Shown here piece after piece: positions 1,247 to 63,000 of a stretch of DNA of 64,000 nucleotides. Position 1 is the first letter of the stretch, and every line of letters begins with the position of its first letter. Location: the NCBI GenBank assembly GCA_029953675.1, contig JAMWBK010000002.1, forward strand, positions 62,001-126,000. The letters run 5' to 3'. The translations under genes were made by a program, and so were the position numbers. The stretch comes from Rhodosorus marinus CCMP1338. Taxonomy: Eukaryota; Plantae; Rhodophyta. The notes beneath the pieces are model-generated. The model made no database searches. It was not told the DNA's origin and saw only the letters and a program-made list of their open reading frames with translations.

Positions 1247-1259
1247 TTACGTTAGTCTG
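1247..1259 (+). repeat. Telomere-like target motif TTACGTTAGTCTG between T2 and T1
   Basis: Exact core located at the junction of a T2 3' end and a 5'-truncated T1. Confidence 0.9.
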
Positions 1260-2131
1260 CATTTCGCATGAACACCGGACGCGAATTCGATCGGCCGCCG
1301 GGTCAGGTTCGGGGATATGGCTGCGGGAGCTGCCGCTGCTGGAGCCCAAAAAGCTGACATCGAACCAATTACAGGTAAATGTCCGTCAACTCTTGGGATT
1401 GCCGATCCCTGGATTAAGGACGACGGAGAAGTGTAGCAGTTGTCGGCGTCCCCACGGTGCCAATGGGGTACAACGCTTTCAACACTGCCCTACGTCAACT
1501 GGGCTATGGCAGAGGAGACACGATGAGATCTGCACGGAATTGGCGAGATGGCTGAACCGTTGGAACTTTTTAGACATACAACAGGAGCCTACATCCTATT
1601 TCGAGAACTACCAGCTACGACCAGATATTATCGCGACCCACCCGAAGACGTTCCAGAGGTACGCTCTGGACGTGACGGTGACTTCACCGCTCCAGGATAA
1701 GTACTTGAGGCGCGGGAGTGGGGAGAGCGGGTATGCAGCGAAGATGGCGGAGAATTATAAATTGGCACACTACAAGGAAGCAATGGCGGTGGAGAAACCC
1801 AGCGACAAATTCGTCCCGATTGCGATTGAGACGTTTGGGCGGACAGGGAAGTTGGCACAAGATTTTTTACGGGATGGCTGCAAGCACCTCCTACATCGTA
1901 GCGAGGAGTTGAGCGACGTACGCGCTCAGCTAAACAGGCACCTTTGGCAGGGGAACGCAGAAGTCGCACTAGGCGCTCTGCGTGTGGACCAGCTGGACAA
2001 TCCAGTGGTCCCTGTTTTTTCTTTAGAACGTAGCATGCGACCCCGGTAGCGGGGTTATTGTAAGTAATTCTCTAGTTAGTGATAGACTCAGTGTTACGCC
2101 GCATTAGGCGGCTGCCCAATAAAGCTTACAG
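1260..2131 (+). mobile_element. Family T1, 5'-truncated copy (Zn knuckle, RLE, 3'UTR)
   Basis: ISHEHRTRIRSAAG..CSSC..HC..RHDEI..RPDI..LDVTV..VPIAIETFG..ERSMRPR*. Near-identical to 48448-49320. The 3'UTR ends AATAAAGCTTACAG. Confidence 0.92.
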
Positions 2132-2195
2132 TTACGTTAGTCTGGGGTAGTCTGGGGTACGTTAGTCTGGGGTAAGTGTACGCGGTTATCTGGGG
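2132..2195 (+). repeat. Degenerate tract of 16-mer units (TTACGTTAGTCTGGGG and partial units)
   Basis: One perfect unit (2132-2147), then TAGTCTGGGG, TACGTTAGTCTGGGG, a 12-nt T2 3'-end scrap and TTATCTGGGG. Confidence 0.88.
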
Positions 2196-2250
2196 TTATT
2201 GGATAAGGTTCGAAATTAAGTTTGTAGGTTTGGTTCGCCTGGGGTAAAAT

Positions 2251-3513
2251 ATGCCAAACACTGGCACTTCCCCTTCGTTTGGGGAGGGGAATTCGAAGAA
2301 TACCGGTGCAATGAGCGGAATGCTGCCTGCCTCTCCAATTGCTGAACGAGAGGACGGGCATGGGCCACATGATGGACTACAAGCGACTACTTTACGCCCA
2401 GAAGAACCGTGCCAGGAGGGGAGTCGGACAGAGCCTTCTACGTCATCCTCTCCCGCTAACACGTTCCTCCACCAACTTCGAAGCTACGATCAGTGCTATC
2501 ACGCCCTCGGAATTGGGGAGCAGGACATCGCGAACTTCTACAAAGCAGTCTTCAATCTCTACTCGCGAATTAACAGTACCACAGAGATACATAATGTCAC
2601 CAGCCGCCTCACGGAACTTGCACAGAAGCCCCACATGTGGCAAGCTTCTGCACAGACTTCGAATCCCTCGGGAGCTTCGGCGCATCACCGGCAGACGGCG
2701 GTGGTCAATCAACTTGCGGCTGGAACGGGCTTCAATCAAGTTCCGGTCGGGACAGGTGTCCCTGCGGGTGTCCGGTTTGAGACGGCTTTCCCGGCCCTTG
2801 GGAATGACACCCCCAGACCCACCTACGCGGCGGTTTCGGCGGTAGAAGTACCAGAGAACGGTGTAGAGACACCCATCCGCACCATGCGAAGGCCTGGGCC
2901 GCAGACGCAACATGCCGCCCTGAAGCAGTTACACGCCACAGTGGGAGGGGCCAGCTGGGGCCCTGAGACCACGCCAGTGCTTGTTACCCTCCGAAATATC
3001 CGTCCCCCACGACAGGATGAGGTGGCTGCTTCTGACTTCACTACGGTCCTATGCCGGGCGTTGGGCATTCCCGGCTCGTATGTGGCGCATCTGGACTTTA
3101 TCTCTTCACGCGTGAGCCTCGTGTGCCACCCTGATGCAATTCCTCTTCTCCAAAGCGCAATCAGCCGGGGTGTGTTCCGGACTGGGATTTTCGGATCCTT
3201 TACCATGCGACACCCCGATCGACAGGTAACCCTGCACACTGGACGCGGCTTAGAGGCTGATAACCTGTTAGGCTTCAACGAACGACAACGGCTCGCACCC
3301 GAGGATATCCCAGGCCAGACGCTGCAACGGGCCATCCAACAAATCATCCGTATAAGGACGCGGCTCGGAAAGCGACACCTGTCCTTCTCCACTCTCGCCG
3401 CCATTCATGAGATGCTGGAAGAACGCCTTGAGGAGCTCCAAGCCCCGCAATCTCCCTCAACGGTACCCGGGGAGAGCGCGGAACCCCCTGCGCCTGCAGC
3501 CGCTACGCAAGCA
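2251..3513 (+). CDS. Retrotransposon ORF1 (RRM-like), 3'-truncated and joined to a host gene
   Basis: Colinear homolog of ORF1 at 30015-31606 (FLHQL.SYD.CY.ALGIG..DIA.FY; LRN.RPPR.DEVA.SDFTTVLCRALGIP). Homology stops at GCTACGCAAGCA (3513). Confidence 0.85.
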
Positions 3514-6221
3514 AGTACGACGACCCGCGAACCTATGCGTATGAAAATTTTCCTCAGCCTTTATCGTACATCGACTATGGTCTCAGCCTCTCGAGGAGGA
3601 TGCTGGATATTATGTTCTTCAACGACGACGCCGAGGAGAACCAAAACGCGTACAATCTGATCCTCCTATCGGTTTCCGATATGCTTTACAACGCGCAACT
3701 AGCTGCCAACCGGACCTCGGACGAGACGGAGAAAGCTAAGTACACCTCGCTGGCCGGCAGGGCAATCTCTATCATCAAAGGTGCGAATCCGCTGACCACC
3801 TCCTCGGGTACGAATGCCAACCAGCTCAGCGTCATGAGCTTTACGTACCTGCTAGACTACCTTGAATCACAGCGTCAGCTCGGAGAATCCATGGAATACT
3901 ACTACGACGCCTACAGAAACAGCGTTGAGGACTCGGAAGCTTCTATGGAGCTCCTTTCCAACGCGACCAGTAACGCGCAGACGGGTATCGCCACGCAGTT
4001 AGCCAAGCAGCAGGCACTGATGGAGGAGATCATGGAGGTGAACCGGTCGATGTCGGTAGCTGATCAAAATATTTGGAAATACAAGAGCACGATGGAGATG
4101 CGGCAGGGTGATATGGACGAGTGTTGGCGTCAGGTCGAAAAGGCTGCTAAGTTCAACAAGGTGATGCAGTTTGTGAGCTTCTTTGCTGGCGTCTTTGACG
4201 CGGCATTCGCAGTGACCAAGGCAATGTCCAAAGTCAGCGGTTGGACCAAGAGTGATTCGCTCGCAGATACAACGAAGGCGGTGTTCTCCGGCATTGATGC
4301 CTGGAGTGGTGTCAAGTTTTCTATGATACCTTCGCTGACGAATGAAATGGTGGACTTCTTCCCTTCGCCTGGAGAAAGCGCCGACTGGTCAGGGTACGAA
4401 GTGAGCTACGAGGCGATCATGGCCGATATTGGACTTATCACGGATGGCACAGAGACGCTCGCGGATCCTCTGGAGAGCGTCTACAGTGCGGACGACTATG
4501 ATGAAGCCGTAGCGCTATCCGCGCAAGTAAACAAGGTCCAAAACTCGATAGGCAGTGCAATGGTGGCGCTTGACAGAAAAGAACTCGAAGACTACGTGGG
4601 GTACATGAAGAAAGAGTGCTACAGCTCGGCGACTGGATTTCTTCAGGCTTTCGATGGGCTGGAGATGTGGGTCAACCAAAAGAATGACCTCATCGCGCTC
4701 TACTCCTCGTATATGAGCTACCTCAAACAGGTCACCGCGACAAAGCTCTACCTAGAGAACGTTGTGGGTGCACTGGCGGTCGAAATGAAGAACAACATGA
4801 TCAACCCTGCCGCACCGGCCGTCAAGGCCGCTCACGAGACCAGCTATTTCCTTCTGATCTCCGATTTTCACCGAGATCTTGAGACCGTCTTGACCGCGAG
4901 AGACTATCTCATGATGGGCTCGGTGTCGTCGGTGGACACCGTTAGCCTTGCGGACTGTGAGTGGGAAGCTTCTCTTCTGGACGAATCATCGAGCTTATAC
5001 TTCAGCTGTGCAGCAGATGCAATCATTCAACTGCAAAAGTCACTCAAGAATTGGTACGAGACCGTTTATTCGCACGGCGAGCTGATGGAGTATGGCAGCT
5101 ACTGGGGCCCTTATAGTATCAACGCACAGACGGTAGGAGAGGATAACTGGACGGAGTTTCTGGAGACGGGGTCAATCAATTTTTGCGTTGACCCATCGCA
5201 TCCGGCGTTCAACAATCTCCCGGGGCTGGACGATCCGCTCTTCTTCCCTATGATTTCGATGGACAGCATGTTCGTCGTTTTCGACGGCGTGTCGCTTGAG
5301 AAGAGCCCAGTTATCGACATCACACACAAGAGCACGTCCGGAATCACTCGTGTTGCAGAGGCAGAGGATGATGAAGACTCGATGTACTACGTGAAGAGGT
5401 ATTCGCACTCCAACCGGGAGCGAACGTTTATGTACTTTGGGGGTGCTCCCGGGTATAGCGAGCTGGAAATGAAGGAGTGGATGGCATCTGACTACATCCG
5501 ACAGCACGCCGTGTTCTCGCAGGACAAATTTATCGACTTAAGCCCATTCAGCAACTATCAAATCGATGCCAGGCTCAGCGACATCGACGGTATTACCAAC
5601 GTTCGGATCTACTTCACTGGAAGCTACGTGAGGTCGCACTTTGCCGATGCCCTGAACTCGTCAAATCCAATCATGTGCAACTCTTTCGATTCGGCTGAGA
5701 CCCCGACCCCGACCCCGACCCCAATAGCGCCTCCGACTCCGACCCAGACACCAATAGCGACTCCTAATCAGACAGCAACGCCGACTCCGACTTCTACGAG
5801 GGCTCCTACGACGGCCCCGACGACGGCTCCCGCAGAAACATCGACCGAGCTACCGTTGCTAGAAATGGTGGCCCGAAAGGAGGAAGCTGATTGCAGTTCT
5901 TACAAGGTATCAGCAGAGAAGGTTGGATCCGTAACCAGGTTCTCCGGTGAGACAGTTAGTGCCTGTGTGATAACGTTTTCGTCTAAGGATGCTGGTGTAA
6001 ACCTGCCGAAGAGCCTCGAGATATCGTGGGAATGGCCCCAAAAGCCGAAGAGACTTTCGTGGGAGCAAGCGGATGGCATCGTCATCAGCTCAAACGAGGT
6101 TTTCGGCGTATTGAGCATCTCCTCTCGACTTCAGAGGTTATCCGAGGCAGTCACGGTTGCCATCTCTGACACCTGTCCAGACAATATCGAAATCGTCGCG
6201 GTTAACCGATCCGGGTGTTGA
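3514..6221 (+). CDS. 5'-truncated host protein: helical/coiled-coil region with hydrophobic segment, beta module, PT linker and C-terminal domain (putative pore-forming toxin-like)
   Basis: 873-aa ORF from ATG 3600; the frame is already open from the junction (KYDDPRTYAYENF..RRMLDI). Long heptad-like stretch, then VMQFVSFFAGVFDAAFAV, a SPFSNYQID..ITNVRIYFTG module and a (PT)n linker. The function call is inference only. Confidence 0.6.
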
Positions 6222-6636
6222 AAGACTTGAGATTATTGTGCCCGTATGCGGTGTGAAATTTTACTTCATGTTCCTGACTGTAAAGTAAGGAGTATAATAA
6301 ATTACACAGTATCGCCTTAAAGCGACGCCAAACCAATGTGTGGGACCCCGAAAAAAATTGTATTGCGCTTATTAGACCTCTTTTACTCCCAGTTTTGGTT
6401 TCGTGAGGGTGTATGGTGCTGGCTTTTGGTGGTTTTGAGTCGCTATTGTGTTCTTCGGTGGGAGGCGCTTCTTTCTGCAGCCTTTCCCCCGCATCTTCTA
6501 GTGGTGTGGTGCGTGCTGGGGGTTGCTAGCGCCCCTTGGAGGTCGTGGTGGTTTTTCTTTGGTTGCAAACGTTGGGAACAAGTTCTCTTTTTGGGGGTTT
6601 CGTGGAGGAATCGGTTTTTCACACCTTCCAATCGTT

Positions 6637-13089: not shown

Positions 13090-13915
13090 TCACGTCAGCT
13101 CACCCGGAGGCCTCCACGGGTCAGCTGGGCACGGTGGCTCTCGCACTTTAGTTCCTCTGGTCATCGAAACTTTTAGCTTAACGGAGCCTGAAGGCGGGGT
13201 GGACTCCACGCTTCCGCCTATTAATAGAAGCAAAAAGCTGTTTAACGGAAGACTTGGCATGCGGGGGGGAATGGACTTCGGGAGCTGAGTGCGAGCACAG
13301 ACCGGTGGGCTTACACAAGCGAAACGAAGATACGAGCAAGCATGAGATGATGATGATTTGTCAGTCTCGGGTTCCGAATAAAGGCTACCGGTTACGTTAG
13401 TCTTGGCGATATTCTAGCAGCATGCTTGCCGAGGCGCGCCATCGGCGCCTGGATTTGTCTCCCTAGTTCTTCGCGCCTGGGTTTGCACGTTTCCCTCCCT
13501 AGTTCTTACTTCTCTTTCACGCCTTGCGTAGCGCTGCCTATTAATAGAAGAAAAAAAACTAGCAACGGAAGACTGGGTTGCGGGGGAATGGACTTCGGGA
13601 GCTGAGTGCGAGCACAGAGCGGTTGGGCTTACACACGAACGAACGAACACAAGGGCAACGAAGATACGAGCAAGCATGAGATGATGCTGATTTGTTAGTC
13701 CGGGGGTTCCGAATGAAGGCTACTCGGTTGCCTTCATTCGGAACCCCCGGACTTAGTCTTGGCGATATTCTAGCAGCATGCCTGCGGAGGCGCGCCATCG
13801 GCGCCTGGTTCTGTCTCCCTAGTTCTTACTTCTCTTTCACGCCTTGCGTAGCGCTTCAGGCTATGCTATAGTTAGTCAGTAAAGTCCAGCAAAGCCAGTA
13901 AAGCCAGTCTAGGGT
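13090..13915 (+). mobile_element. Three tandem 3'-end fragments of C/B-related elements
   Basis: RLE tail remnants (LVPLVIETF; WRYSSSMLAEARHRR) are repeated and separated by TTACGTTAGTCT (13392-13403) and TTAGTCT (13753-13759). Confidence 0.7.
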
Positions 13916-14640: not shown

Positions 14641-14677
14641 ATACTCAGTGGTTTTTACCGTTTCCGTGGTTTTTGTT

Positions 14678-14696
14678 GGGGTTACGTTAGTCTGGG
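14678..14696 (+). repeat. Telomere-like unit GGGGTTACGTTAGTCTGGG ahead of an element 5' end
   Basis: Exact core located 50 nt upstream of the ORF1 ATG (14747). Confidence 0.88.
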
Positions 14697-26566: not shown

Positions 26567-27832
26567 CCCCAGATAACCGCGTACACTTACCCCAGACTAA
26601 CGTACCCCAGACTACCCCAGACTAACGTAACTGTAAGCTTTATTGGGCAGCCGCCTAATGCGGCGTAACACTGAGTCTATCACTAACTAGAGAATTACTT
26701 ACAATAACCCCGCTACCGGGGTCGCATGCTACGTTCTAAAGAAAAAACAGGGACCACTGGATTGTCCAGCTGGTCCACACGCAGAGCGCCTAGTGCGACT
26801 TCTGCGTTCCCCTGCCAAAGGTGCCTGTTTAGCTGAGCGCGTACGTCGCTCAACTCCTCGCTACGATGTAGGAGGTGCTTGCAGCCATCCCGTAAAAAAT
26901 CTTGTGCCAACTTCCCTGTCCGCCCAAACGTCTCAATCGCAATCGGGACGAATTTGTCGCTGGGTTTCTCCACCGCCATTGCTTCCTTGTAGTGTGCCAA
27001 TTTATAATTCTCCGCCATCTTCGCTGCATACCCGCTCTCCCCACTCCCGCGCCTCAAGTACTTATCCTGGAGCGGTGAAGTCACCGTCACGTCCAGAGCG
27101 TACCTCTGGAACGTCTTCGGGTGGGTCGCGATAATATCTGGTCGTAGCTGGTAGTTCTCGAAATAGGATGTAGGCTCCTGTTGTATGTCTAAAAAAGTTC
27201 CAACGGTTCAGCCATCTCGCCAATTCCGTGCAGATCTCATCGTGTCTCCTCTGCCATAGCCCAGTTGACGTAGGGCAGTGTTGAAAGCGTTGTACCCCAT
27301 TGGCACCGTGGGGACGCCGACAACTGCTACACTTCTCCGTCGTCCTTAATCCAGGGATCGGCAATCCCAAGAGTTGACGGACATTTACCTGTAATTGGTT
27401 CGATGTCAGCTTTTTGGGCTCCAGCAGCGGCAGCTCCCGCAGCCATATCCCCGAACCTGACCCGGCGGCCGATCGAATTCGCGTCCGGTGTTCATGCGAA
27501 ATGCAGACTAACGTAACCGCGTACACTTTACTGAAGAACTCCCTATTGGAGCCCATTAAGAAGCAATAAGGATCCTATTGGTCAGCAAAGAAACCCCTAA
27601 TGGGTTGTGTGGCTACGTTCTAAGATAGGGACGATGTCATAGTCTGCTTCGTCGACACGACGTGCCTGGGTGGCAAGGATAGCGTTTCCTTTCCACAAAG
27701 TGCGGTTCAAGATCGCCCGAGCCTCACTTACTTGCGTTGCCCGCTGATCCAGGTGTATAGTCGCTTCCTTGAGGAACTCACTCGCTTGTTGTCCCATCTG
27801 CCCAAATGTTTCCAGGCAGAAGGGGACGAAGA
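26567..27832 (-). mobile_element. Mirror array: repeat tract (26567-26630), T1 fragment (26631-27503), motif (27504-27516), T2 fragment (27517-27832)
   Basis: Reverse complement of 931-2195. Confidence 0.9.
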
Positions 27833-27836
27833 CGAA

Positions 27837-31606: not shown

Positions 31607-31663
31607 ACTTGTAACTTTTTATCAGCTTTTTCCGTCGTTTTCCACAAACAAAGCCGTCCAAAA

Positions 31664-48302: not shown

Positions 48303-48447
48303 CCCCAGACTAACGTAACTGTAAACTTTACTCGGCAACTGCCTAATGCAGCGCAACACTAATTCTATCAAGATCTAGGGAAAATGTGTGTGTTTAACCC
48401 CGACTCCCGGGGTCTCTAGCTACGATAAAAACCCCAGACTACCGTAA
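48303..48447 (-). repeat. 16-mer unit, 113-nt T4 3'UTR scrap and a variant unit
   Basis: Units at 48303-48318 and 48432-48447 (one mismatch) flank a copy of 51004-51116. Confidence 0.88.
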
Positions 48448-50202
48448 CTGTAAGCTTTATTGGGCAGCCGCCTAATGCGGCGTAACACTGAGTCTATCAC
48501 TAACTAGAGAATTACTTACAATAACCCCGCTACCGGGGTCGCATGCTACGTTCTAAAGAAAAAACAGGGACCACTGGATTGTCCAGCTGGTCCACACGCA
48601 GAGCGCCTAGTGCGACTTCTGCGTTCCCCTGCCAAAGGTGCCTGTTTAGCTGAGCGCGTACGTCGCTCAACTCCTCGCTACGATGTAGGAGGTGCTTGCA
48701 GCCATCCCGTAAAAAATCTTGTGCCAACTTCCCTGTCCGCCCAAACGTCTCAATCGCAATCGGGACGAATTTGTCGCTGGGTTTCTCCACCGCCATTGCT
48801 TCCTTGTAGTGTGCCAATTTATAATTCTCCGCCATCTTCGCTGCGTACCCGCTCTCCCCACTCCCGCGCCTCAAGTACTTATCCTGGAGCGGTGAAGTCA
48901 CCGTCACGTCCAGAGCGTACCTCTGGAACGTCTTCGGGTGGGTCGCGATAATATCTGGTCGTAGCTGGTAGTTCTCGAAATAGGAGGTAGGCTCCTGTTG
49001 TATGTCTAAAAAGTTCCAACGGTTCAGCCATCTCGCCAATTCCGTGCAGATCTCATCGTGTCTCCTCTGCCATAGCCCAGTTGACGTAGGGCAGTGTTGA
49101 AAGCGTTGTACCCCATTGGCACCGTGGGGACGCCGACAACTGCTACACTTCTCCGTCGTCCTTAATCCAGGGATCGGCAATCCCAAGAGTTGACGGACAT
49201 TTACCTGTAATTGGTTTGATGTCAGCTTTTTGGGCTCCAGCAGCGGCAGCTCTCGCAGCCATATCCCCGAACCTGACCCGGCGGCCGATCGAATTCGCGT
49301 CCGGTGTTCACGCGAAATGCGTTCATTGCTGACCAGGCGTTCGAAGGCCGAATGGTGTGCCTCTCGGGAGAGGGTTTGTTGTTGGGAACCATTATTCCAA
49401 CCTTTCGAAGCGTCACTGGGGTCGTCGTTGCCATGGGTTGAACCATGGCTCACCGCGCACAATCTCTTGATCCTCGGATGGGTCTCGGGGCGTAGTCGAC
49501 GCTGTATGGCTCGACTTGAGGCCCTTATCTGCTCTCCCAGCTGCTCCGTCGACACTTGAATGCGCCCGAAACCGCTTGTGGATGTGTGGTCAGGTCTCCG
49601 TACCTGTCTCTCGAGCTCGGTGATGTGAGGCCATTCGTCTTCGTTACTGCGGAAGGTCTGGACCCAGGCTGAGAAGAACGCGATCGGCTGAATGCGCGTT
49701 CGGGTTGCAAACCCCAGTCCACCCCATCGGCAGGGTAGCGCGATCTGGTCGTCAACGGGATGACTGGACTCCTCTTCCGCTAGGGCCGTTGTAGACAGTC
49801 CTCCGTACAGGACTTCCAGGTGATACCTACTCAGAGCGTCAGCTTCCCGCGCCAAGGCTCGTCCGAACGGGTATGCCAGGCATCTGAGAAGGTAGTCAAG
49901 CCTGGTTTCCGCGCAATACCTGAAAAGAGCAAGCTGCGTTGGCAGTTCCTCGCTTGGAAGCTTCGAGATTTCTTGGAACAGTGTCTCGTGTTTGAGCTGC
50001 ATTGCTCGGCACTCCTGTTCTATGTACTGACGAGTTCTAAGCGGGATGGAGTGTATCGTCACTCCTTCTCTGCTCACGTGTACTCCTGGCAGCTCTCGGT
50101 TAACAAGGCGGGTAGTTGTTAGAGATCGTCCATAAAGCGTGCATTTGCCCAATTGTAGGCGGGCCCCTAGAGACGGGAGAAAGGTTTGTCCCCAGCTCAG
50201 TG
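48448..50202 (-). mobile_element. Family T1, 5'-truncated copy (RT thumb to 3' end)
   Basis: Intact 540-aa frame 48530-50152; overlaps about 680 bp with 27869-28550 at near identity. Confidence 0.93.
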
Positions 50203-50218
50203 CCCCAGACTAACGTAA

Positions 50219-50950
50219 CCCTAGGCGCTCGATATCCCAAGCATGATGGGCCTTGCTTCTGGTGGAGTCCCGAGGTCGAGCATTGAGTAGCACAAATGCA
50301 TCAACGTCCTTCTGGCTCTGGTACTGCAGCCCATGAATGCTCGCGAAAAACGAGCGATTGGCAGCTGCTGGGGTCTGGTTGGCGCGGACACGTGTCGTCC
50401 AGCTCATTGGTTGAGGTTGAGCTCGAGTCCTTGTCCGTGCTTGCTCATTGGCCGTTACGAGATCTGGGAATGCATTGGAATCGAGATCACGTGTCTCGGG
50501 AGATCGCGGGCGGGCTGCTGCAGTGGCGTAGTTTGCTGGTTCGTAGACAGGGAGGGGGCGTTGTGCCCTCGGGGCAGCTTGTTGTGGCGTCGTAGTCAGA
50601 TTGTGAAGGAGTTGAGCCTCGGTGCCATTGGCGTGTGCCTGGGCTAAGAGACCCATAAACCGCAGCATAAGCCCATTGTAGAGCGGGGTCTTATGCTTGG
50701 GCGCGTCGAGATGCAGCTTCAGCGCTCCGCAGCTCAGGTCAATTGCCAAGGGAGTAGGTACGTCGTTGTCAAGTGCAGATGCAGTTGTAGGCTCAGAAAC
50801 AGGTACTGGCAGAGGCTCGGGTGCGTCTGCCCTCAGGCAAACGGCCGGGAGGTCTTCCATCGTTGCGTCTGTGCAAAAGCCCCCCCCATCCGGAGGCACG
50901 GGCTCGAGAGTAGTCATATCACTCGATAAGCGTTCGTAGAAAGAATGAAA
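50219..50950 (-). mobile_element. 5' end and N-terminal ORF1 of another family, truncated and flanked on both sides by the 16-mer
   Basis: ATG 50917 lies 33 nt after a unit. IDLSCGALKLHL..LLAQAH..QLLHNL resembles B/C ORF1 N-termini. Flanking units at 50203-50218 and 50951-50966. Confidence 0.65.
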
Positions 50951-51003
50951 CCCCAGACTAACGTAACCCCGTAGCCTTTATTGGGCACCCCAGACTAACG
51001 TAA
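50951..51003 (-). repeat. Two perfect units separated by a 21-nt T5 3'-terminal scrap
   Basis: Minus strand: TTACGTTAGTCTGGGG TGCCCAATAAAGGCTACGGGG TTACGTTAGTCTGGGG. Confidence 0.92.
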
Positions 51004-52371
51004 CTGTAAACTTTACTCGGCAACTGCCTAATGCAGCGCAACACTAATTCTATCAAGATCTAGGGAAAATGTGTGTGTTTAACCCCGACTTCCGGGGTCT
51101 CTAGCTACGATAAAAAAGAAAAATAAGGGATCAGTGGCTGGTCCGACTGATCCACGCGCAAAGCCCCTAACGCGAGCTCCGCGTTCCCTGCCCAGAGTGT
51201 TCTGTTTAGTTGAGCCCGCACGTTGCTCAACTCGTACTGCTTAGTTAGGCATGTGCCCACAGCCCTCACGGAGAAAGTCTTGGGTCATCTGCCCTGTAAT
51301 GATGAACGCCGTGTAGCCGACCTGGTGATCACCTGTGACGACAGCCGCCGTACCACATACGTTGATCTTGCTGTTCCTAACCCTCAAGCTAGTCGTTATC
51401 TCCCGGCTGCGGGGGAGCGCCGTGGATCTGCCGCCGCCAGCATGAGACGCCGCAAAGAGATCAAATACGCGGGGGCTTTGTCTTCCCCTGGTGTTCGTGC
51501 TTCGGCACTAGCACATCGCTTGGTACCCCTGATCATTGAGTGCTTTGGGTTCATGGACTCTGTTGGTTCTCGCTGGCTTCGGGAGTTGTTCCGCGAACGC
51601 CCTGACCGTCTTCAATCGTTGTTTACCCGCTTAAGTTTCCTGCTGTGGCGCATGAATGCCGCTTTGATGTTGGAGGCGCGAGTACTGCGCCGCGCTTAGT
51701 CTTTTTTTCCCCTCGGGGTTTTTTTTTTTTCAGCCTCCGATTAAACCATTCGTTCGTTCTGCCGAAGGTTTCTATCGCAATCGGAATCAGTTTGTCATCT
51801 GGATGCTCTGTCGCCATCGCCTCCTTGTAGTGTGCAAGTTTCCAACGCTCCGCCTGTTTTGCTGCATAACCATTGTTGTCTTTGCTGTTGGCTAGGTGTC
51901 TCGCCTGTAGGGGTGACACCACCGTCACATCGATCGCAAATCGTTGCCAGGTTCGAGGGTGTATAGCTACCAAGTCAGGTCGTAGATTCGAGTTCGTGAA
52001 GTAGTCTGTAGGTTCTTGCTGAACATCTCTGAACTGCCATCTGTTAAGCCAGCGCGCCAGCTCAGTGCAGAGCTCATCATGTCGCCGTTGCCAGAGCCCA
52101 GTCGAGGTCTGACAATGATGGAATCTTTGTACACCGTTCGTACGGTGTGTACTATTACACGTAGTACACCTCTCCGTCGTTCGCAGTCCCGGAATCGGGA
52201 GACCCAGCAATTGTCGGATATTCAGGTGCATGCCTCTCCCGCTCAATTTTCGGGGTCCGAATTGTGGCAAATCTCTTAGCCAGACACCTGAACCTGCTCC
52301 TGCAGCGGAACGGATTCGGGCACGATGTTCCGGGTCGAGTAAGGGATCCGTGACCAGTCGGGTGAAAGCAA
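51004..52371 (-). mobile_element. Family T4, 5'-truncated, interrupted by an inverted B fragment
   Basis: ..IPIAIETFGRT stops at 51758 and resumes as TGQMTQDFLR at 51297. A unit at 52372-52387 precedes it. Confidence 0.85.
51298..51757 (+). mobile_element. Family B 3' fragment nested in T4
   Basis: Matches 10670-11126; a 2-nt GT overlap is present at the flanks. Confidence 0.92.
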
Positions 52372-52387
52372 CCCCAGACTAACGTAA

Positions 52388-53913
52388 CCGTAAGCTTTAC
52401 TGGGCAGCTGCCTACTGCAGCGCAACACTACGTCTAATCCTATCTAGGGAGAAACTTACTGGAACCCCGCTACCGGGGTCTCATGCTACGTTCAAAAGAA
52501 AAAACAGGTACCAGCGGGTTCTCCAGCTGGTCCACGCGCAAAGCGCCTAATGCTATCTCTGCGTTACCTCGCCATAGTTGCCGGTTTATCTGGGATCTCA
52601 CGTCTCTCAGCTCCTCACTCCTGTGCAGTAGGTGTTTGCAGCTGTCGCAGAGGAAATCTTGTGCCATTTGCCCCGTACGCCCAAACGTCTCTATCGCTAT
52701 CGGGATGAACTTGTCATCCGGTTTCTCGATCACCATCGCTTCTTTGTAGTGAGCGATTTTCCACTTCTCCGCAGCTCTCGCCGCGTATCCGCTATCATCT
52801 TGGCTCCGCCGCAAATATTTTCCCTGTAATGGTGACACCACCGTCACATCCGAACGAATGGTCACATCCAGCGCATACCTTTGTTTGGTCCTCGGATGCC
52901 TAGCAACGATATCAGGTCGCAGTCCGTAGTTCTCGAAGTACCCCTCAGTTTCTTGCTCTACGTCCATGAAGTTCCATCGCCTTAGCCACCGTGCCAGCTC
53001 TCTGCAGATTTCGTCATGCCTACGTTGCCACAGTCCAGTTGATGTTGGGCAGTGATGAAACCGTTGTACCCCAGTCCTTCCGTGTTTACTCCGGCAACTA
53101 GTGCACTTCTCGGTGGTCCGCAATCCCGGAATTGGCAGACCCAGCAGTTGTCGAACGTTTACCTGCATCTCAACCGCACTCAATTTTTTCGGTGTCAGCG
53201 TTGGTATTTCACGTAGCCAGACTCCCGACCCGGATCCCGCGGCAGACCGTATTCGAGCTCGGTTTTCAGGGGAGATTCGTGGGTTGGTGACCAGCTTTTG
53301 GAATGCACAATGGTGTGCCTCTCGAGAGAGGGTTTGTTGTATTGAACCATTATTCCAAGCTGCAGTCTCGCCCGGGGCGCTTCGAAGAGATGTTTCTCGC
53401 GGTTGTTGCAGGGTAGTCAGTGCCAAGATCCGCGGCGGGGTTTCTGGTCCGAGCCTCCGTTGTATTGCTCGCGACGATGCACAGATCTGGTCCGCCAGCT
53501 GTGCAGTCGACCATCGTTGATCCATCGGCTCGTATGTGTCTGGTCAGCGTTCTGCCGAAACCTCCCGCTCTAGTTCAGTCAATTATGGCCATTCATCTTC
53601 ATTGTTCCGGAAGGTGTTTCTCCATGACGAGTAAAACGCGATGGGTTGGACGCGCTTTCGAGTAGCGAAACCCAAACCTCCCCAGCGGCAGGGCAGAGCG
53701 ATTTGGTCCGAGATCAGCTCTGCGTACTCATCGTCCTCTACAGCTGTCGTAGCGAGGCCTCCGAATAGAATTTCCAGGTGATATCTGGTCATCACGTCGG
53801 CCTCGCGTGCCAGATTTCTTCCAAACTCGTATGCGAGGCATCGTAGCACATAGTCTAGTCGCGTTTCTGCACAGAACCTGAAGAGGGCAATTTGCGTCGT
53901 AAGCTCCGGTCCA
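52388..53913 (-). mobile_element. Family T3, 5'-truncated (one frameshift near 53550)
   Basis: ORFs 53583-53849 and 52470-53525 are homologous to T1. Units on both sides (52372-52387, 53914-53929). Confidence 0.9.
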
Positions 53914-54041
53914 CCCCAGACTAACGTAACCTCATGCCGAGTCTAGAAAAGGTACTTGCAATGACCTAGACCCCAGACTAAGAGTATAAAATAAGCTGCG
54001 CTAGAGTGGAAATATGAGAAGGCGAAAGGTAGAAGTTAAAC

Positions 54042-59815: not shown

Positions 59816-60324
59816 GGTCGGTAACCGATCGAAGGATCCACTGCGTGGCCACCTTTCGGAGGACTTCGGGTACTCCGATCGGCCGGATGCCAGGTCTCAC
59901 TGCAACGGTTGTGTTGCTCGTGGGTTTTTCAAACGGCAGTAGTCTGCTGCTACGCATTGCCCGGGTCATCTGGGGTGCAAACTTCTCTGGTGCCGTAGCG
60001 AGTTGCCGGAGAACGCGGATTAGAGCCACTTAGACGTCCTGGGTGGCTCCCTGCAGGTGTTCTGCTCGGAGTCCACTAGGCCCGGGGCTGGTACCTTGGC
60101 GAAGCCGGGCTATTATCGCGAGAATATCTTCATCTGCTGCTTGTCGCGCATTCCATCTTGTCCTGAGATTATCGGTGTCCTTGGAGAGCAGGTTTTGTAG
60201 GGCTTGGTCGACATCCTCCGGTAGGGAACACTCCGTCGGGTCCGGAAAGAGTTCCTCCGATTGTTGCCACGTAGCGTTGGTAAATGGAGCCAGTTCGGTG
60301 GCCTGCAGTCTTCGGGTGCATTCC
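59816..60324 (-). mobile_element. Inverted RT N-terminal fragment (T-group)
   Basis: GTSPGPSGLRAEHLQG and IRPIGVPEVLRK; internal stop at 60030. Confidence 0.85.
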
Positions 60325-61236
60325 AAAGGTTGGTCACCAACCCACGAATCTCCCCTGAAAACCGAGCTCGAATACGGTCCGCCGCGGGGTCCGGGTCGGG
60401 AGTCTGGCTGCGTGAAATACCAACGCTGACACCGAAAAAATTGAGTGCGGTTGAGATGCAGGTAAACGTTCGACAACTGCTGGGGCTGCCAATTCCGGGA
60501 TTGCGCACCACCGAGAAGTGCACTAGTTGCCGGAGTAAACACGGAAGGACTGGGGTACAACGGTTTCATCACTGCCCAACATCAACTGGACTGTTGCAAC
60601 GTAGGCACGACGAAATCTGCAGAGAGCTGACACGGTGGCTGAGGCGATGGAACTTCATGGACGTAGAGCAAGAACCTGAGGGGTACTTCGAGAACTACGG
60701 AGTGAGACCTGATATCGTTGCTAGGCATCCGAGGACCAAACAAAGGTATGCGCTGGATGTGACCATTCGTTCGGATGTGACGGTGGTGTCACCATTACAG
60801 GGAAAATATTTGCGGCGGAGCCAAGATGATAGCGGATACGCGGCGAGAGCTGCGGAGAAGTGGAAAATCGCTCACTACAAAGAAGCGATGGTGATCGAGA
60901 AACCGGATGACAAGTTCATCCCGATAGCGATAGAGACGTTTGGGCGTACGGGGCAAATGGCACAAGATTTCCTCTGCGACAGCTGCAAACACCTACTGCA
61001 CAGGAGTGAGGAGCTGAGAGACGTGAGATCCCAGATAAACCGGCAACTATGGCGAGGTAACGCAGAGATAGCATTAGGCGCTTTGCGCGTGGACCAGCTG
61101 GAGAACCCGCTGGTGCCTGTTTTTTCTTTTGAACGTAGCATGAGACCCCGGTAGCGGGGTTCCAGTAAGTTTTTCCCTAGATAGGATTAGACGCAGTGTT
61201 GCGCTGCAGTAGGCAGTTGCCCAGTAAAGCTTACGG
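60316..61236 (+). mobile_element. Family T3, 5'-truncated
   Basis: Near-identical to the reverse complement of 52388-53310; followed by TTACGTTAGTCTGG (61237-61250). Confidence 0.92.
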
Positions 61237-61250
61237 TTACGTTAGTCTGG

Positions 61251-62425
61251 ACTGGTGGAGGCAAGTCGCGCAATTAGACGACGTTTGCAGTGCACGGATC
61301 CAGAGGCTGGCCGATTGGCAACGGCTGGAGGACTCGGCCGAAGGCACAGCGGAAGACACAGGAGGTACCCAAAGGTTTGACGGTCCGATCCAAAAAACGC
61401 TCTCTCGAGAGTGTCACCGACAAGCCTTTGAGGAGCTTACTGGAGATTCAACACTGGACGACCTAGACCGGGCGAGGATCCGATCGGCATCTGGAACGGG
61501 GTGCGGGGTCTGGCTACGCGACTGTCCTAGTACAGGGCCGCGGCAGTTGACGCGAAATGAGATGCAGTGGAGCATGCGGATGCTTCTAGGGCTACCACTA
61601 CAAGGACTAGGGCGGTCACACACGTGCACAGTCTGCGAGCAACCACACGATGTGCGTGGGATCCAGCGGCTGTACCACTGCAGGACCTCATCAGGGATGC
61701 GAACCAAGAGGCACGACGAGCTAAAGGTGGAACTGAGTCGATGGTTACACCTATGGAGTTTCACGGAGATACAAGTAGAGCCTCAGGGGTTCTTTGCTGG
61801 GTCTGGAATTCGCCCAGACATCGTTGCACGACACCCGACGAGCGGATGCGTGTACGTGGTGGATGTGATGGTGACATCGCCACTTCAAAGACATCAGTTG
61901 AGACATACGAGCTGGAACTGCGGGTATGCTGCGAAACAGGCCAAACAAGCGAAGACGTTGCATTATAAGGAAGTGTTGAGGGGGCAAAACCGAGATGTGG
62001 TTCTTGTGCCGTTCATTTTTGAGACAATTGGTCGAATGGGCCAGGCAAGCCTTGAATTTCTTCGAACGGCGAGCGCGCACCTGCATGATCGTGACTCCCA
62101 TCTATCGTCGGTGAGGGGTCAACTAAACCGCATTTTGTGGCAGCACAATGCTGCGCTAGTTGAGCACGCGATCGAGAAAGATCGCGCAGATAGACCGATA
62201 TTTCCCCTAAGTAGAATTTAGATGAGACTCCTGGACAGGGAGTCCAGGTTTGGTTAGTGCGTACGTAGTGATCATGTGATGCGCTACATTAGGTAGCTGC
62301 CCAATAAAGGCTACGGGGTAGAATTTAGATGAGACTCCTGGACAGGGGGCCCAGGTTTTATTTGTGCGTACGTAGTGATCGTGTGATGCGCTACATTAGG
62401 TAGCTGCCCAATAAAGGCTACGGGG
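61251..62425 (+). mobile_element. Family T5, 5'-truncated, with a duplicated 3'UTR
   Basis: ORF to 62221 (CTVC..HC, RHDEL, RPDI, VDVMV, VPFIFETIG). The 3'UTR 62214-62318 is repeated at 62319-62425; a perfect unit follows at 62426-62441. Confidence 0.9.
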
Positions 62426-62441
62426 TTACGTTAGTCTGGGG

Positions 62442-62987
62442 TTTGACAGTAGAACCGACTGGACACTACCAAGGCAGCCGGCTTCGGCCTGACTTTCTAG
62501 CCCGACACCCACGAACAGGCAAGCTCTACGTGATCGATGTGAAGGTGATCTCGCCGTTGCAAAGAACACACCTACACAAAGCGTCTTGGGAGACCGGGTA
62601 TGCGGCACGGAAAGCGGAAAAGTTTAAAGAGTCCAAATACCGTGACAGTATCGGAGAACACAACGACGACATCTTCATCCCCTTCTGCCTGGAAACATTT
62701 GGGCAGATCGGAAAACAAGCGAGTGAGTTCCTCAAGGAAGCGACTATACACCTGGATTAGCGGGCAACGCAAGTAAGTGATGCTCGGGCGATCTTGAACC
62801 GCACTCTGTGGAAAGGAAACGCTATCCTTGCCACCCAAGCTCGTCGTGTCGACGAAGCAGACTATGACATCGACCCTATCTTAGAACGTAGCCACACAAC
62901 CCATTAGGGGTTTATTTGCTGACCAATAGTATCCTTATTCCTTCTTAATGGGCTCCAATAGGGAGCTCTTCAGTAAAGTGTACGCGG
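62442..62987 (+). mobile_element. Family T2, 5'-truncated
   Basis: Near-identical to 703-1246; followed by the variant unit TTACGGTAGTCTG (62988-63000). Confidence 0.92.
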
Positions 62988-63000
62988 TTACGGTAGTCTG

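What the first reader, a model, noticed from the sequence alone, without database searches (positions are those of the whole stretch)
1247..63000. Candidate novel 16-bp telomere repeat (TTACGTTAGTCTGGGG) shared as insertion site by five CRE-like retrotransposon families
Seen: at least 18 exact copies of the core TTACGTTAGTCT by manual count on both strands, plus single-mismatch variants. Random expectation for a 12-mer in 128 kb is about 0.008. Every copy lies at an element junction, and a perfect dimer occurs at 27837-27868. Five diverged families end at the same phase: T1 ..TTACAG|TTACG, T2 ..CGCGG|TTACG, T3 ..TTACGG|TTACG, T4 ..TTACAG|TTACG, T5 ..TACGGGG|TTACG. The element sense strand is always the G-rich strand, and several termini mimic the target (TTACR). 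Known: RLE-type elements are often site-specific, and telomere-associated relatives exist in fungi (MoTeR in Magnaporthe, Cnl1 in Cryptococcus). Inference: this is a long, yeast-like telomere unit, nicked on the C-rich strand, that hosts a multi-family community of telomeric retroelements stacking head-to-tail one or two units apart.
Basis: partly seen in the sequence, partly recalled or inferred. Interest (0 to 1): 0.92.

Follow-up and report, generated by a model that had tools for sequence, protein, structure and literature searches.

The report
Red alga's probable 16-base telomere repeat
In the red alga Rhodosorus marinus, at least five families of jumping genes insert head-to-tail at one fixed point of a 16-base repeat that behaves like the alga's undescribed chromosome-end (telomere) repeat, although the chromosome tips themselves could not be read here.

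Summary
TTACGTTAGTCT occurs 18 times exactly and 4 times with one mismatch (0.2 expected), always at a boundary between sequence blocks. The window is Rhodosorus marinus CCMP1338 contig JAMWBK010000002.1, bases 62,001-126,000, so it is subtelomeric, not terminal. Five diverged families (T1-T5) of non-LTR retrotransposons with a restriction-like endonuclease end exactly before TTACG. Their sense strand is always the G-rich strand. The 5' junction of the next element varies.

Four new results point to a tandem repeat that something other than the elements adds to DNA ends:
- A 3'-truncated element is capped by two perfect units.
- A 58-bp satellite breaks at ...AAGG and continues GG+TTACGTTAGTCT.
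- Five of six non-element upstream flanks end in GG.
- The base after a complete unit is T in 11 of 12 independent cases, so the target was a unit-unit boundary.

This fits telomerase healing followed by site-specific insertion. Telomere identity is still unproven. The contig ends could not be reached, no array exceeds about 2.6 units, and two blocks have inverted polarity. The closest known systems are the fungal MoTeR, FoTeR and Cnl1 elements, which insert in the opposite orientation. I found no paper that prints this repeat. Verdict: real, a new variant of a known kind, telomere reading about 65% likely.

The parts
1..1246 (+). T2 element, 3' part (runs off the left edge of the window). It has a frameshifted ORF with an REL endonuclease motif and ends ..AGTAAAGTGTACGCGG.
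1247..1258 (+). 12-nt unit TTACGTTAGTCT between the T2 3' end and a 5'-truncated T1.
1259..2131 (+). 5'-truncated T1 element (REL domain ORF 1189-2046). It ends ..AATAAAGCTTACAG and is 99.3% identical to 48431-49320.
2132..2195 (+). Unit tract: TTACGTTAGTCTGGGG, TAGTCTGGGG, TACGTTAGTCTGGGG, then a 13-nt T2 tail (2173-2185), then TTATCTGGGG. It is mirrored at 26567-26630 on the minus strand.
2196..6383 (+). 'A' element with a full-length 5' end (ORF1 2251-3660, orphan ORF 3600-6221). A second copy lies at 22351-26566 on the minus strand.
13392..13403 (+). 12-nt unit after a T5-like tail ..AATAAAGGCTACCGG.
14682..14696 (+). 15-nt unit preceded by ..TTGTTGGGG and followed by the 5' end of a degenerate T1-like element (14697 to about 17040).
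26631..27504 (-). 5'-truncated T1, the mirror copy of 1259-2131.
27505..27516 (-). 12-nt unit, the mirror of 1247-1258.
27517..27836 (-). 5'-truncated T2.
27837..27868 (-). Perfect dimer of the 16-nt unit, capping a 3'-truncated element (junction ..AAGGGC|TTACG).
27869..31663 (-). T1-like element with an intact 5' end: ORF1 (30018-31670) and ORF2 with RT (AIHDD). It is cut off internally at 27869. The copy at 49521 continues into the REL domain.
31664..31783 (-). Degenerate unit tract. Read on the minus strand it runs: seed GGGG; TTACGTTAGTCT; 20-nt T5 tail (31748-31767); TTAGTCTGGGG; TAAAACTGTCTGGGG; TAAAGTCTGGGG; TAAGAACCACGCACACTGGGG; TTACGTTAGTCT; GTCTAGTCTGGGG.
31816..32185 (.). 58-bp satellite, 6.4 copies. 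A further, diverged copy (31837-31780) follows the array called by TRF; it breaks at ..TTTCAAGG and continues GG+TTACGTTAGTCT.
48303..48318 (-). Full unit between a T4 tail and unique DNA. The stop codon of the annotated 272-aa gene (47352-48313) lies inside it.
48319..48431 (-). 113-nt 5'-truncated T4 tail, flanked by two non-identical units.
48432..48447 (-). Variant unit TTACGGTAGTCTGGGG.
48448..50202 (-). 5'-truncated T1 (1.75 kb) with one ORF through the RT C-terminus, the CCHC motif and the REL domain.
50203..50218 (-). Full unit preceded by ..GCGCCTAGGG.
50219..50950 (-). 732-bp block of unknown origin (U1). It is one open frame on the G-strand side and has no relative in the window.
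50951..51003 (-). Unit, then a 21-nt T5 tail (50967-50987), then a unit. This is an extreme 5'-truncated insertion exactly between two full units.
51004..52371 (-). 5'-truncated T4, interrupted by an inverted N-family fragment (51298-51757).
52372..52387 (-). Full unit.
52388..53913 (-). 5'-truncated T3 (RT C-terminus plus REL).
53914..53982 (-). Full unit (53914-53929) preceded by ..GCATGAGG, a 42-nt spacer, and the 11-nt variant TTAGTCTGGGG (53972-53982).
60316..61236 (+). T3 3' part, 98% identical to 52374-53308.
61237..61250 (+). 14-nt unit.
61251..62425 (+). 5'-truncated T5 with a 107-bp duplicated tail.
62426..62441 (+). Full unit.
62442..62987 (+). 5'-truncated T2.
62988..62999 (+). 12-nt variant unit TTACGGTAGTCT.

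Best explanation
TTACGTTAGTCTGGGG is most likely the telomerase-made telomere repeat of Rhodosorus marinus, and the window is an old, rearranged stretch of chromosome-end sequence.

Shown: at least five families of non-LTR retrotransposons with a C-terminal restriction-like endonuclease (T1-T5, CRE-like) insert at the boundary between two units. The 3' junction is fixed (element|TTACG). The 5' junction of the next element falls either 1-3 nt into the next unit (GGGG+T/TT) or after TCT.

Inferred: the endonuclease nicks the C-rich strand at 5'-..CGTAA^CCCC..-3'. That 3'-OH primes reverse transcription of the element RNA. The RNA carries a small conserved 3' hairpin, an A(A/G)TAAAG signal and a terminus (TTACAG, TTACGG, CTACGGGG) that resembles a shortened unit. 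The second strand is cut a few bases away.

Inferred: when ends break or erode, telomerase re-seeds units on any 3' end that finishes in a G-run, and new elements insert into the fresh tract. Long internal tracts are lost. What remains is stacks of mostly 5'-truncated elements one unit apart. Later fusions and fold-backs inverted some blocks.
For: 1. Motif enrichment and junction position.
2. Precise 3' junction for five families, all on the G-rich strand.
3. The elements are of the endonuclease-bearing (RLE) type. RVT_1 hits are, and the RT motif AIHDD. All five families match RH[DN]-x19-33-E-x9-21-[RK]PD-x12-14-[DE] (consensus from PMC12857005). The six best fold matches are R2 retrotransposon proteins, followed by PD-(D/E)xK nucleases. 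The source paper's supplement gives LINE CRE/SLACS as 9.04% of the genome.
4. The target was a tandem array and not a target-site duplication. Units flanking single inserts differ (TTACGG against TTACGT at 48447/48318 and at 62426/62988). A 21-nt tail sits exactly between two full units. T follows a complete unit in 11 of 12 independent cases, P about 1e-6.
5. Units are added independently of the elements. The T1-like element is 3'-truncated at 27869, where the copy at 49521 continues, and it is capped by two perfect in-phase units. Target-primed reverse transcription cannot give that. A diverged 58-bp satellite copy next to the array breaks at ..CAAGG and continues GG+TTACG. Five of six non-element flanks end in GG, P about 1e-5.
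6. Irregular variants (TTAGTCTGGGG, TAGTCTGGGG, TAAAGTCTGGGG and others) keep the GTCTGGGG end, as slippage on a template would give.
7. Location and polarity. The window is 62-126 kb from the left end of a 3.48-Mb contig. In the 27-kb minus-strand block the G-rich strand runs 5'->3' towards that end.
8. No conserved sequence extends beyond the 16 nt, and there are no Rfam hits. That excludes a larger gene as the target.
9. Literature. Red algal telomeres outside the Cyanidiophyceae are unresolved. Stable interstitial telomere tracts between MoTeR copies are also limited to 2 repeats or fewer.
Against: No chromosome end was examined. The contig ends, raw reads and telomerase RNA were out of reach.

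The longest run here is two perfect units, or about 2.6 counting variants. Two blocks (1247-14696 and 61237-62999) have the G-rich strand pointing away from the nearest contig end.

At 48303 a unit is followed, in the distal direction, by unique gene-bearing DNA. That needs an extra fusion or capture event.

The junction at 27869 is GGGC|TTACG, an imperfect seed. Three of the six G-run junctions (31689, 50219, 53930) could be tails of families not otherwise present in the window.

The assembly is Nanopore-based, so lengths of G-runs may carry errors. The genome paper reports telomeres on 12 contigs but does not print their sequence, so it may differ.
Confidence: 0.65

Rival explanations
1. The 16-mer is a non-telomeric minisatellite, for example a subtelomeric or heterochromatic one, that these elements have specialised on. 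The true telomere repeat is something else. Copies spread inside transposon islands because each insertion keeps a unit on both sides.
For: No array longer than about 2.6 units is seen, and the polarity is mixed over 64 kb. The window is 62 kb from the contig end. Elements that target microsatellites or satellites are known among site-specific non-LTR families (my own knowledge). CRE-type elements make up 9% of the genome, which could equally mean centromeric or dispersed islands.
Against: It does not explain how perfect, in-phase units come to cap a 3'-truncated element and a broken satellite repeat at G-runs. The unit has the T/A-then-G-run build of telomere repeats. The main block has the polarity expected for the nearest end.
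Confidence: 0.2
2. The unit is carried by the elements themselves. It would be a 3' tail copied from read-through transcripts or made by reverse-transcriptase stuttering, as with the short tandem tails of some LINEs. It therefore appears wherever an element lands.
For: The A(A/G)TAAAG signal lies only 6-8 nt before the element end, so transcripts probably run into the downstream unit. At 48303 one unit lies between an element tail and unique DNA. The variant TTACGG recurs after two different families.
Against: Units also lie upstream of randomly 5'-truncated copies. They cap a 3'-truncated element and a satellite repeat. They occur without any element tail before them (six junctions). Five families only 43-75% identical would all have to keep an identical 16-nt tail. 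The N family in the same genome has no such tail.
Confidence: 0.1
3. The unit is a piece of a multicopy gene, such as a spliced-leader RNA, snRNA, rRNA or tRNA gene, which is the usual kind of target for CRE, SLACS, R2 and Utopia elements.
For: Known CRE-clade elements of trypanosomatids target spliced-leader genes (my own knowledge; the elements are named).
Against: Nothing is conserved beyond the 16 nt on either side at any of the 19 independent sites. There are no Rfam matches at gathering score anywhere in the window.
Confidence: 0.02
4. It is an assembly or polishing artefact of a Nanopore assembly in a repeat-rich region.
For: The assembly was made with NextDenovo and Pilon. A 5.5-kb inverted duplication at 99.2% identity is present.
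Against: There are nineteen independent junctions in different sequence contexts with exact 12-16-nt identity. The orientation rules are coherent and the flanking ORFs are intact. An assembler would not produce these.
Confidence: 0.02

Closest known systems
MoTeR1/MoTeR2 (Magnaporthe/Pyricularia oryzae), FoTeRs (Fusarium oxysporum) and Cnl1 (Cryptococcus neoformans): telomere-repeat-specific non-LTR retrotransposons of the CRE group with a restriction-like endonuclease
   Same: RT plus a C-terminal CCHC/REL endonuclease. A fixed 3' junction with a telomere-type repeat. Many 5'-truncated copies. Head-to-tail arrays separated by very short repeat tracts. Variant repeat-like sequence at full-length 5' ends. 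Internalised relics and rearrangements at chromosome ends.
   Different: Orientation is opposite. In MoTeR the 5' end faces the chromosome tip, and FoTeR 3' ends are followed by TAACCC, so their sense strand is the C-rich strand. Here the sense strand is the G-rich strand. The target is a 16-nt unit, not TTAGGG or TTAGGGGG. At least five diverged families coexist, and CRE-type elements reach about 9% of the genome, against a few to tens of copies in the fungi. The host is a red alga. Two ORFs instead of one. No phylogeny was made here.
CRE1/CRE2, SLACS and CZAR (trypanosomatids)
   Same: The REL core motif RHD..E..R/KPD..D/E has the same spacing. They insert site-specifically. RepeatMasker files the R. 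marinus elements as CRE/SLACS.
   Different: Those elements target spliced-leader RNA genes. Here the conserved target is only a 16-nt tandem unit with no gene around it. The CCHC spacing differs (C-x2-C-x13-HC).
SART1 and TRAS1 of Bombyx mori (R1 clade, telomeric TTAGG repeats)
   Same: Endonuclease-dependent, phase-specific insertion into telomerase-type repeats. Several families share the same repeat. SART and TRAS insert in opposite orientations, so insertion with the sense strand on the G-rich strand has a precedent.
   Different: They use an AP-type endonuclease and have poly(A) tails. They are insect elements, and the unit is 5 nt.
R2 elements (28S rDNA)
   Same: Best structural match for the endonuclease domain and a weak sequence match across CCHC and RPD..D. 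The first-strand nick is precise, the 5' junctions vary, and the stagger is a few bases.
   Different: R2 targets a gene rather than a short repeat. It has a single ORF with N-terminal zinc-finger and Myb domains, which were not found here.
Long or irregular telomere repeats of budding yeasts (8-26 nt, e.g. Candida, Kluyveromyces; Yarrowia TTAGTCAGGG) and the red-algal candidates AATGGGGGG (Cyanidioschyzon) and TTATT(T)AGGG (Galdieria)
   Same: A T/A-rich start and a G-run end. The unit is longer than the common 6-8 nt. The variants look like slippage products. The red-algal candidates show that the lineage departs from TTAGGG. The yeast repeats are cited from my own knowledge.
   Different: No terminal arrays, telomerase RNA or binding proteins are known for this unit. 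Whether it is a telomere repeat at all is not shown.

Membership tests
Non-LTR retrotransposons with a restriction-like endonuclease (R2/CRE superfamily) | Reverse transcriptase domain with an intact catalytic motif | tested here: met
   Pfam RVT_1 in the ORF at 27844-30015. PDB matches to L1 ORF2p and R2 reverse transcriptases. The motif VAIHDD is present.
Non-LTR retrotransposons with a restriction-like endonuclease (R2/CRE superfamily) | C-terminal PD-(D/E)xK nuclease core: RHD/N-x19-33-E-x9-21-R/KPD-x12-14-D/E | tested here: met
   All of T1-T5 match a regular expression built from the published consensus (consensus quoted in PMC12857005).
Non-LTR retrotransposons with a restriction-like endonuclease (R2/CRE superfamily) | CCHC motif with spacing C-x1-3-C-x7-8-H-x3-4-C before RHD | tested here: inconclusive
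   The cysteines and histidines are present, but the spacing is C-x2-C-x13-H-C followed by x9-RHD. The strict pattern is not matched; a loosened one is matched in T1, T3, T4 and T5.
Non-LTR retrotransposons with a restriction-like endonuclease (R2/CRE superfamily) | Restriction-endonuclease-like fold of the C-terminal domain | tested here: met
   The AlphaFold model has low overall confidence (pLDDT 48), but the core reaches 72-80 with an alpha-beta-beta-beta-alpha-beta layout. Foldseek ranks six R2 protein structures first (probability 0.99-1.0), then PD-(D/E)xK nucleases.
CRE clade (CRE1/2, SLACS, CZAR, MoTeR, Cnl1) | Grouping with the clade in an RT or REL phylogeny | not tested
   No reference sequences were available. 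The only support is the RepeatMasker label LINE CRE/SLACS in the source paper's supplement.
CRE clade, spliced-leader-specific members | Insertion in spliced-leader RNA genes | tested here: not met
   No conserved flank extends beyond the 16 nt, and there are no Rfam matches.
Site-specific non-LTR retrotransposons in general | Fixed 3' junction with the target, variable 5' junction, 5' truncations | tested here: met
   Fourteen element tails abut TTACG (or TTAGTCT in one case). The 5' junctions fall after 12, 14, 15 or 16 nt, or after 16 nt plus T. Copies range from 13 nt to full length.
Fungal telomeric retrotransposons (MoTeR/FoTeR type) | 5' end towards the chromosome tip, sense strand on the C-rich strand | tested here: not met
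   All T elements have their sense strand on the G-rich strand. MoTeR and FoTeR have the opposite orientation.
Telomerase-made telomere repeat | Tandem arrays at the physical ends of chromosomes | not testable with these tools
   The window is 62-126 kb from the contig end. The elements' proteins are not in the protein index, so I could not walk to the end. The 24-mer is absent from the metagenome, GTDB and viral collections.
Telomerase-made telomere repeat | G-rich strand runs 5'->3' towards the chromosome end | tested here: inconclusive
   This holds for the 27-kb block 26590-53929 relative to the left contig end. It is reversed in 1247-14696 and 61237-62999.
Telomerase-made telomere repeat | De novo addition to non-telomeric 3' ends at G-rich seeds, in register | tested here: met
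   A 3'-truncated element is followed by two perfect units. A satellite repeat ending ..AAGG is followed by GG and then a unit. Five of six non-element flanks end in GG. The pattern is consistent with healing, but telomerase itself was not observed.
Telomerase-made telomere repeat | A telomerase RNA with a matching template | not testable with these tools
   Every occurrence in the window is at a junction between blocks.

The most novel reading that the evidence does not exclude
Rhodosorus marinus, and perhaps the Stylonematophyceae in general, has a 16-nt telomerase-templated telomere repeat, TTACGTTAGTCTGGGG. That would be an unusually long and complex unit; the comparable cases I know of are in budding yeasts. 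It would also be the first resolved telomere of a non-cyanidiophyte red alga. Its chromosome ends would be built of roughly 100-kb stacks of at least five co-existing families of endonuclease-bearing retrotransposons. These insert with their sense strand on the G-rich strand, opposite to the fungal telomeric elements, and amount to about 9% of the genome.
Probability: 0.55. Interest if true: 0.8.

Novelty: new variant of a known kind. Interest (0 to 1): 0.68.

Why it matters
Telomere sequences of red algae outside the hot-spring Cyanidiophyceae are still called missing, fragmentary or 'recalcitrant to standard analysis' (PMC3622300, PMC7046594). If this unit is the telomere, it gives a concrete and easily tested candidate. 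It also predicts the template for a red-algal telomerase RNA, which is unknown.

Telomere-repeat-specific retrotransposons are listed from insects, Giardia, Chlorella, fungi, a lizard and rotifers (PMC10088271). A red-algal case would show independent or ancient specialisation of the CRE group on telomeres. This case has many families, the opposite orientation and a far higher genome share. It would offer a natural system for asking how a genome tolerates, or uses, elements that make up most of its chromosome ends.

Practically, it would explain what the 9% 'CRE/SLACS' fraction of this genome is doing and where it sits.

Tried and rejected
1. Literature search for the 16-mer in all rotations and both strands found only unrelated primer hits. 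A search for Rhodosorus plus telomere found only the genome paper, which does not give the sequence in its text or in the supplements held. The gene-position sheet that could have shown gene-poor contig ends was truncated.

2. Scans for a 1.5-unit 24-mer in JGI metagenomes, GTDB genomes and IMG/VR found nothing. This is uninformative, because the organism is not in those collections.

3. Walking to the contig end failed. The elements' ORFs are not in the protein index. Only two lookups of annotated window genes were possible, and they fixed the window's position and strand.

4. A chimeric query of unmasked ORFs, meant to catch annotated paralogues near other ends, was first too long, then timed out, then returned nothing.

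5. A search for relatives of the REL domain in metagenomes found none.

6. Target-site duplication as the source of the flanking units is rejected, because the two flanks of single inserts differ.

7. A larger gene as the target is rejected.

8. The 732-bp block U1 and the 'A' element's second ORF could not be identified.

9. The 3' UTR hairpin is real but small: 7 pairs, of which 2 are compensatory. It is supporting detail only.

Full report
OBSERVATION. The 12-mer TTACGTTAGTCT occurs 18 times exactly and 4 times with one mismatch on the two strands, against 0.21 expected from dinucleotide-preserving shuffles. The 16-mer TTACGTTAGTCTGGGG occurs 10 times exactly and 18 times within two mismatches, against 0 expected. 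Tandem Repeats Finder reports the perfect dimer at 27835-27872. Six copies lie in the arms of an inverted duplication (931-6383 and 22351-27832, 99.2% identical). That leaves 19 independent sites. The motif lies on the plus strand at 1247-14696 and 61237-62999, and on the minus strand at 26590-53929.

SOURCE. A host gene in the window, a PQQ-type sugar dehydrogenase at 46251-47306 (Pfam GSDH), has an exact match in the protein collection. Its encoding contig is NCBI GCA_029953675.1, JAMWBK010000002.1, 3,480,314 bp. A second lookup fixed strand and offset: the window is bases 62,001-126,000 of that record, in the same orientation. The accession belongs to the nuclear genome of the unicellular red alga Rhodosorus marinus CCMP1338 (Stylonematophyceae; PMC10250338). 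[quoted passage not shown] Neither its text nor the supplements held give the telomere sequence. Its RepeatMasker table lists 4,036 LINE CRE/SLACS fragments, 2.82 Mb, 9.04% of the genome. The two largest families are only about 1% diverged.

THE ELEMENTS. Five 3' termini recur next to the motif:
- T1 ..CCCAATAAAGCTTACAG
- T2 ..CAGTAAAGTGTACGCGG
- T3 ..CCCAGTAAAGCTTACGG
- T4 ..CCGAGTAAAGTTTACAG
- T5 ..CCCAATAAAGGCTACGGGG

The proteins encoded just upstream are 43-75% identical between families. All five match the core of the restriction-like endonuclease consensus published for CRE/SLACS elements, RHD/N-x19-33-E-x9-21-R/KPD-x12-14-D/E (consensus quoted from PMC12857005). An example is RRHDEIC..QQE..RPDIIATHP..ALDVTV in T1. 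The zinc-knuckle spacing is unusual (C-x2-C-x13-HC).

A structure model of the T1 C-terminus has low overall confidence, but its core is confident and has an alpha-beta-beta-beta-alpha-beta layout. Foldseek puts six R2 retrotransposon protein structures first, followed by PD-(D/E)xK nucleases. A weak sequence alignment to an R2 protein covers the same CCHC and RPD..D residues.

The most complete copy (27869-31663, minus strand) has a 551-aa ORF1 and an ORF2 with a reverse transcriptase (Pfam RVT_1; motif VAIHDD; PDB matches to L1 ORF2p and R2). The copy at 48448-50202 shows that ORF2 continues into the endonuclease domain.

T1, T3, T4 and T5 share a 7-bp hairpin with loop A(T/G)TAG about 20 nt before the end. 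Two of its pairs show compensatory changes. All element ORFs lie on the strand that carries the G-rich form of the motif.

A further family ('N', RT ORF 7649-11071) ends ..CCATTCGTTCGT in four copies. It is followed by a different sequence each time and never by the unit. The unit is therefore not a general by-product of retrotransposition in this genome.

JUNCTION ANATOMY. The 3' junction is fixed. Fourteen element tails abut TTACG, or TTAGTCT of an 11-nt variant in one case. Every tail ends in G, GG or GGGG, which could belong to a preceding unit, so the exact nick position is ambiguous by up to 4 nt.

The 5' junction of the next element varies. In four independent cases it comes after TTACGTTAGTCT. 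In single cases it comes after 14 or 15 nt. Otherwise it comes after the full 16 nt.

After a complete unit the next base is T (one to five Ts) in 11 of 12 independent cases, although the downstream elements are truncated at unrelated positions (binomial P about 1e-6). The simplest reading is that the upstream flank keeps the first T or TT of a following unit. The target would then be a unit-unit boundary, GGGG|TTACG, cut with a stagger of a few bases.

Three insertions are extreme truncations:
- a 21-nt T5 tail exactly between two full units (50951-51003);
- a 20-nt T5 tail (31748-31767);
- a 13-nt T2 tail (2173-2185).

The two units that flank single inserts can differ: TTACGGTAGTCTGGGG against TTACGTTAGTCTGGGG around the 113-nt T4 tail at 48319-48431, and likewise around T2 at 62442-62987. 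The flanks are therefore not a target-site duplication. They are neighbouring members of an array that already existed and contained variants.

Nothing beyond the 16 nt is conserved at any site, and the window has no Rfam match at gathering score. The target is therefore not part of an RNA gene.

EVIDENCE THAT UNITS ARE ADDED TO DNA ENDS INDEPENDENTLY OF THE ELEMENTS. First, the T1-like element at 27869-31663 is truncated at its 3' side. Its sequence matches the copy at 49521-50203 up to ..CAGATAAGGGC. The other copy then continues into the coding sequence, while this one continues with two perfect units. Target-primed reverse transcription starts at the 3' end of the RNA and cannot give a 3'-truncated copy. 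A random deletion would hit the start of a unit only one time in 16.

Second, a diverged copy of the 58-bp satellite, lying just beyond the array that TRF calls at 31816-32185, ends at ..CCATTTTCAAGG, where other copies read ..CCATTTCATGG followed by CCATTTTGC. It continues GG TTACGTTAGTCT. This looks like a GG end filled to GGGG and then extended in register.

Third, of the six units not preceded by an element tail, five follow GG, GGG or GGGG and the sixth follows GGGC (P about 1e-5 for GG).

Fourth, the irregular variants all keep the GTCTGGGG end and vary at the T/A-rich start (TTAGTCTGGGG, TAGTCTGGGG, TACGTTAGTCTGGGG, TTATCTGGGG, TAAAACTGTCTGGGG, TAAAGTCTGGGG).

These are the marks of chromosome healing by a telomerase whose template begins and ends in C-runs. 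That is an inference. No telomerase was observed.

POSITION AND POLARITY. The nearest contig end is the left one, 62 kb from the window. In the 27-kb minus-strand block the G-rich strand runs 5'->3' towards it, as a telomere should. Read outward, the order is: gene island (32.2-48.3 kb), 58-bp satellite, first units, then element stacks.

Against a simple picture, the two plus-strand blocks are inverted. One of them belongs to the 99% inverted duplication, which suggests a fold-back event. At 48303 a unit is followed distally by unique DNA, and the stop codon of an annotated 272-aa gene lies inside that unit. This needs a fusion or capture event. Events of this kind are documented for MoTeR relics in Magnaporthe.

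MECHANISM PROPOSED.
- Shown: site-specific insertion of endonuclease-bearing retrotransposons at the unit boundary, with the sense strand on the G-rich strand.
- Follows from the established mechanism of R2-type elements: the endonuclease nicks the C-rich strand (5'-..CGTAA^CCCC..-3'). That end primes cDNA synthesis on the element RNA, and the G-rich strand is cut a few bases away.
- Inferred: the RNA ends inside or just before the downstream unit, because the AATAAAG signal is only 6-8 nt from the element end. The unit-like termini (TTACAG, TTACGG, CTACGGGG) may help register the RNA on the target.
- Inferred: telomerase makes the units and heals broken ends. Long internal tracts are unstable, which would explain why one unit is the usual spacing. 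In Magnaporthe, stable interstitial tracts between MoTeR copies likewise have two repeats or fewer.

COMPARISON WITH KNOWN SYSTEMS. The closest are the fungal telomeric elements MoTeR, FoTeR and Cnl1. They share the enzyme type, the fixed 3' junction with the telomere repeat, the truncated copies in arrays and the variant repeats at 5' ends. The orientation is the reverse. MoTeR 5' ends face the chromosome tip, and FoTeR 3' ends are followed by TAACCC. Membership in that group is therefore not claimed.

SART and TRAS of Bombyx show that both orientations occur among telomere-repeat-specific elements, but they use a different endonuclease. CRE, SLACS and CZAR share the endonuclease motif but target spliced-leader genes, which is excluded here.

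A published list of telomere-inserting retrotransposons covers insects, Giardia, Chlorella, a fungus, a lizard and rotifers, and mentions no red alga. Reviews state that red-algal telomere sequences are mostly missing or fragmentary. No paper in the searchable library prints this 16-mer in any rotation.

LIMITS. The decisive test is whether contig and read ends carry arrays of the unit, and I could not run it. The elements' ORFs are not in the protein index. The external collections do not contain the organism. The assembly is Nanopore-based, so the lengths of G-runs should be treated with care.

VERDICT. The transposon biology is well supported. I judge the telomere identity of the unit about 65% likely, from junction evidence within the window alone. 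It is a new variant of a known kind of system, in a lineage where the underlying question, what red-algal telomeres are made of, is still open.

Noticed in passing
window 931-6383 (+) and 22351-27832 (-): A 5.5-kb inverted duplication, 99.2% identical, with arms 16 kb apart, made of T2, T1 and 'A' elements and their units. It could be a recent fold-back or palindrome, such as a breakage-fusion-bridge product, or an assembly artefact.
   Followed up: partly
window 31816-32185: A 58-bp satellite, 6.4 copies, lies at the boundary between the gene island and the first units. It looks like a subtelomeric satellite.
   Followed up: partly
window 46251-47306: A PQQ-type glucose/sorbosone dehydrogenase gene whose best homologues are bacterial, at only about 30% identity. 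It may be a horizontally acquired gene sitting in a subtelomeric island.
   Followed up: no
window 47352-48313: An annotated 272-aa gene with one intron takes its last codons and its stop codon (TAA) from the C-strand unit at 48303. The gene seems to have been cut off by the repeat and element stack.
   Followed up: partly
window 35272-35939: Pirin-domain ORFs (Pfam PF02678), split over two frames, lie in the gene island. This is either a gene with an intron or a frameshift.
   Followed up: no
window 36873-37738 (repeats 37087-37699 and 37964-38129): An annotated 265-aa gene consists largely of 24-bp coding tandem repeats (25 copies). A long ORF is also open on the opposite strand.
   Followed up: no
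window 6384-11126; fragments 51298-51757, 54042-54507, 57138-57469; relics 40.7-44.6 kb and 17.3-22.3 kb: 'N' is a separate family of reverse-transcriptase elements (RT motif AYHDD) that ends ..CCATTCGTTCGT and is never next to the unit. Its closest named relative is a Pyropia vietnamensis hypothetical protein (37% identity over 21% of the query). Both copies of the 'A' element are followed at the same point (6383 and 22351) by an N-type element, and these two are only about 40% identical to each other.
   Followed up: partly
window 2196-6383 and 22351-26566: The 'A' element has an ORF1 65% identical to the T1-like ORF1. It then has an orphan ORF of 873-929 aa with no Pfam or PDB match and no reverse transcriptase. 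It may be non-autonomous, or it may carry a captured gene.
   Followed up: partly
window 57482-57766 and 58694-59110: A 100-bp tandem repeat built from a T3-like 3' tail (..CAGTAAAGCTAACGG). The tail is followed by TTACTTGTGACGGTTAGGCCGTGGG instead of the unit. This is an exception to the junction rule, and a satellite born from an element tail.
   Followed up: no
window 50219-50950: A 732-bp block between two units is one open reading frame on the G-strand side. It has no relative in the window and no Pfam hit, and it ends ..CCTAGGG before the unit. It may be a fragment of a family not otherwise present, or captured DNA.
   Followed up: partly
window 57795-57820 (+) and 63334-63341 (-): Isolated unit-like pieces (TATAGTCTGGGGTAAATTTTGGGGG; GTCTGGGGT) lie outside the listed junctions. 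They may be decayed units.
   Followed up: no
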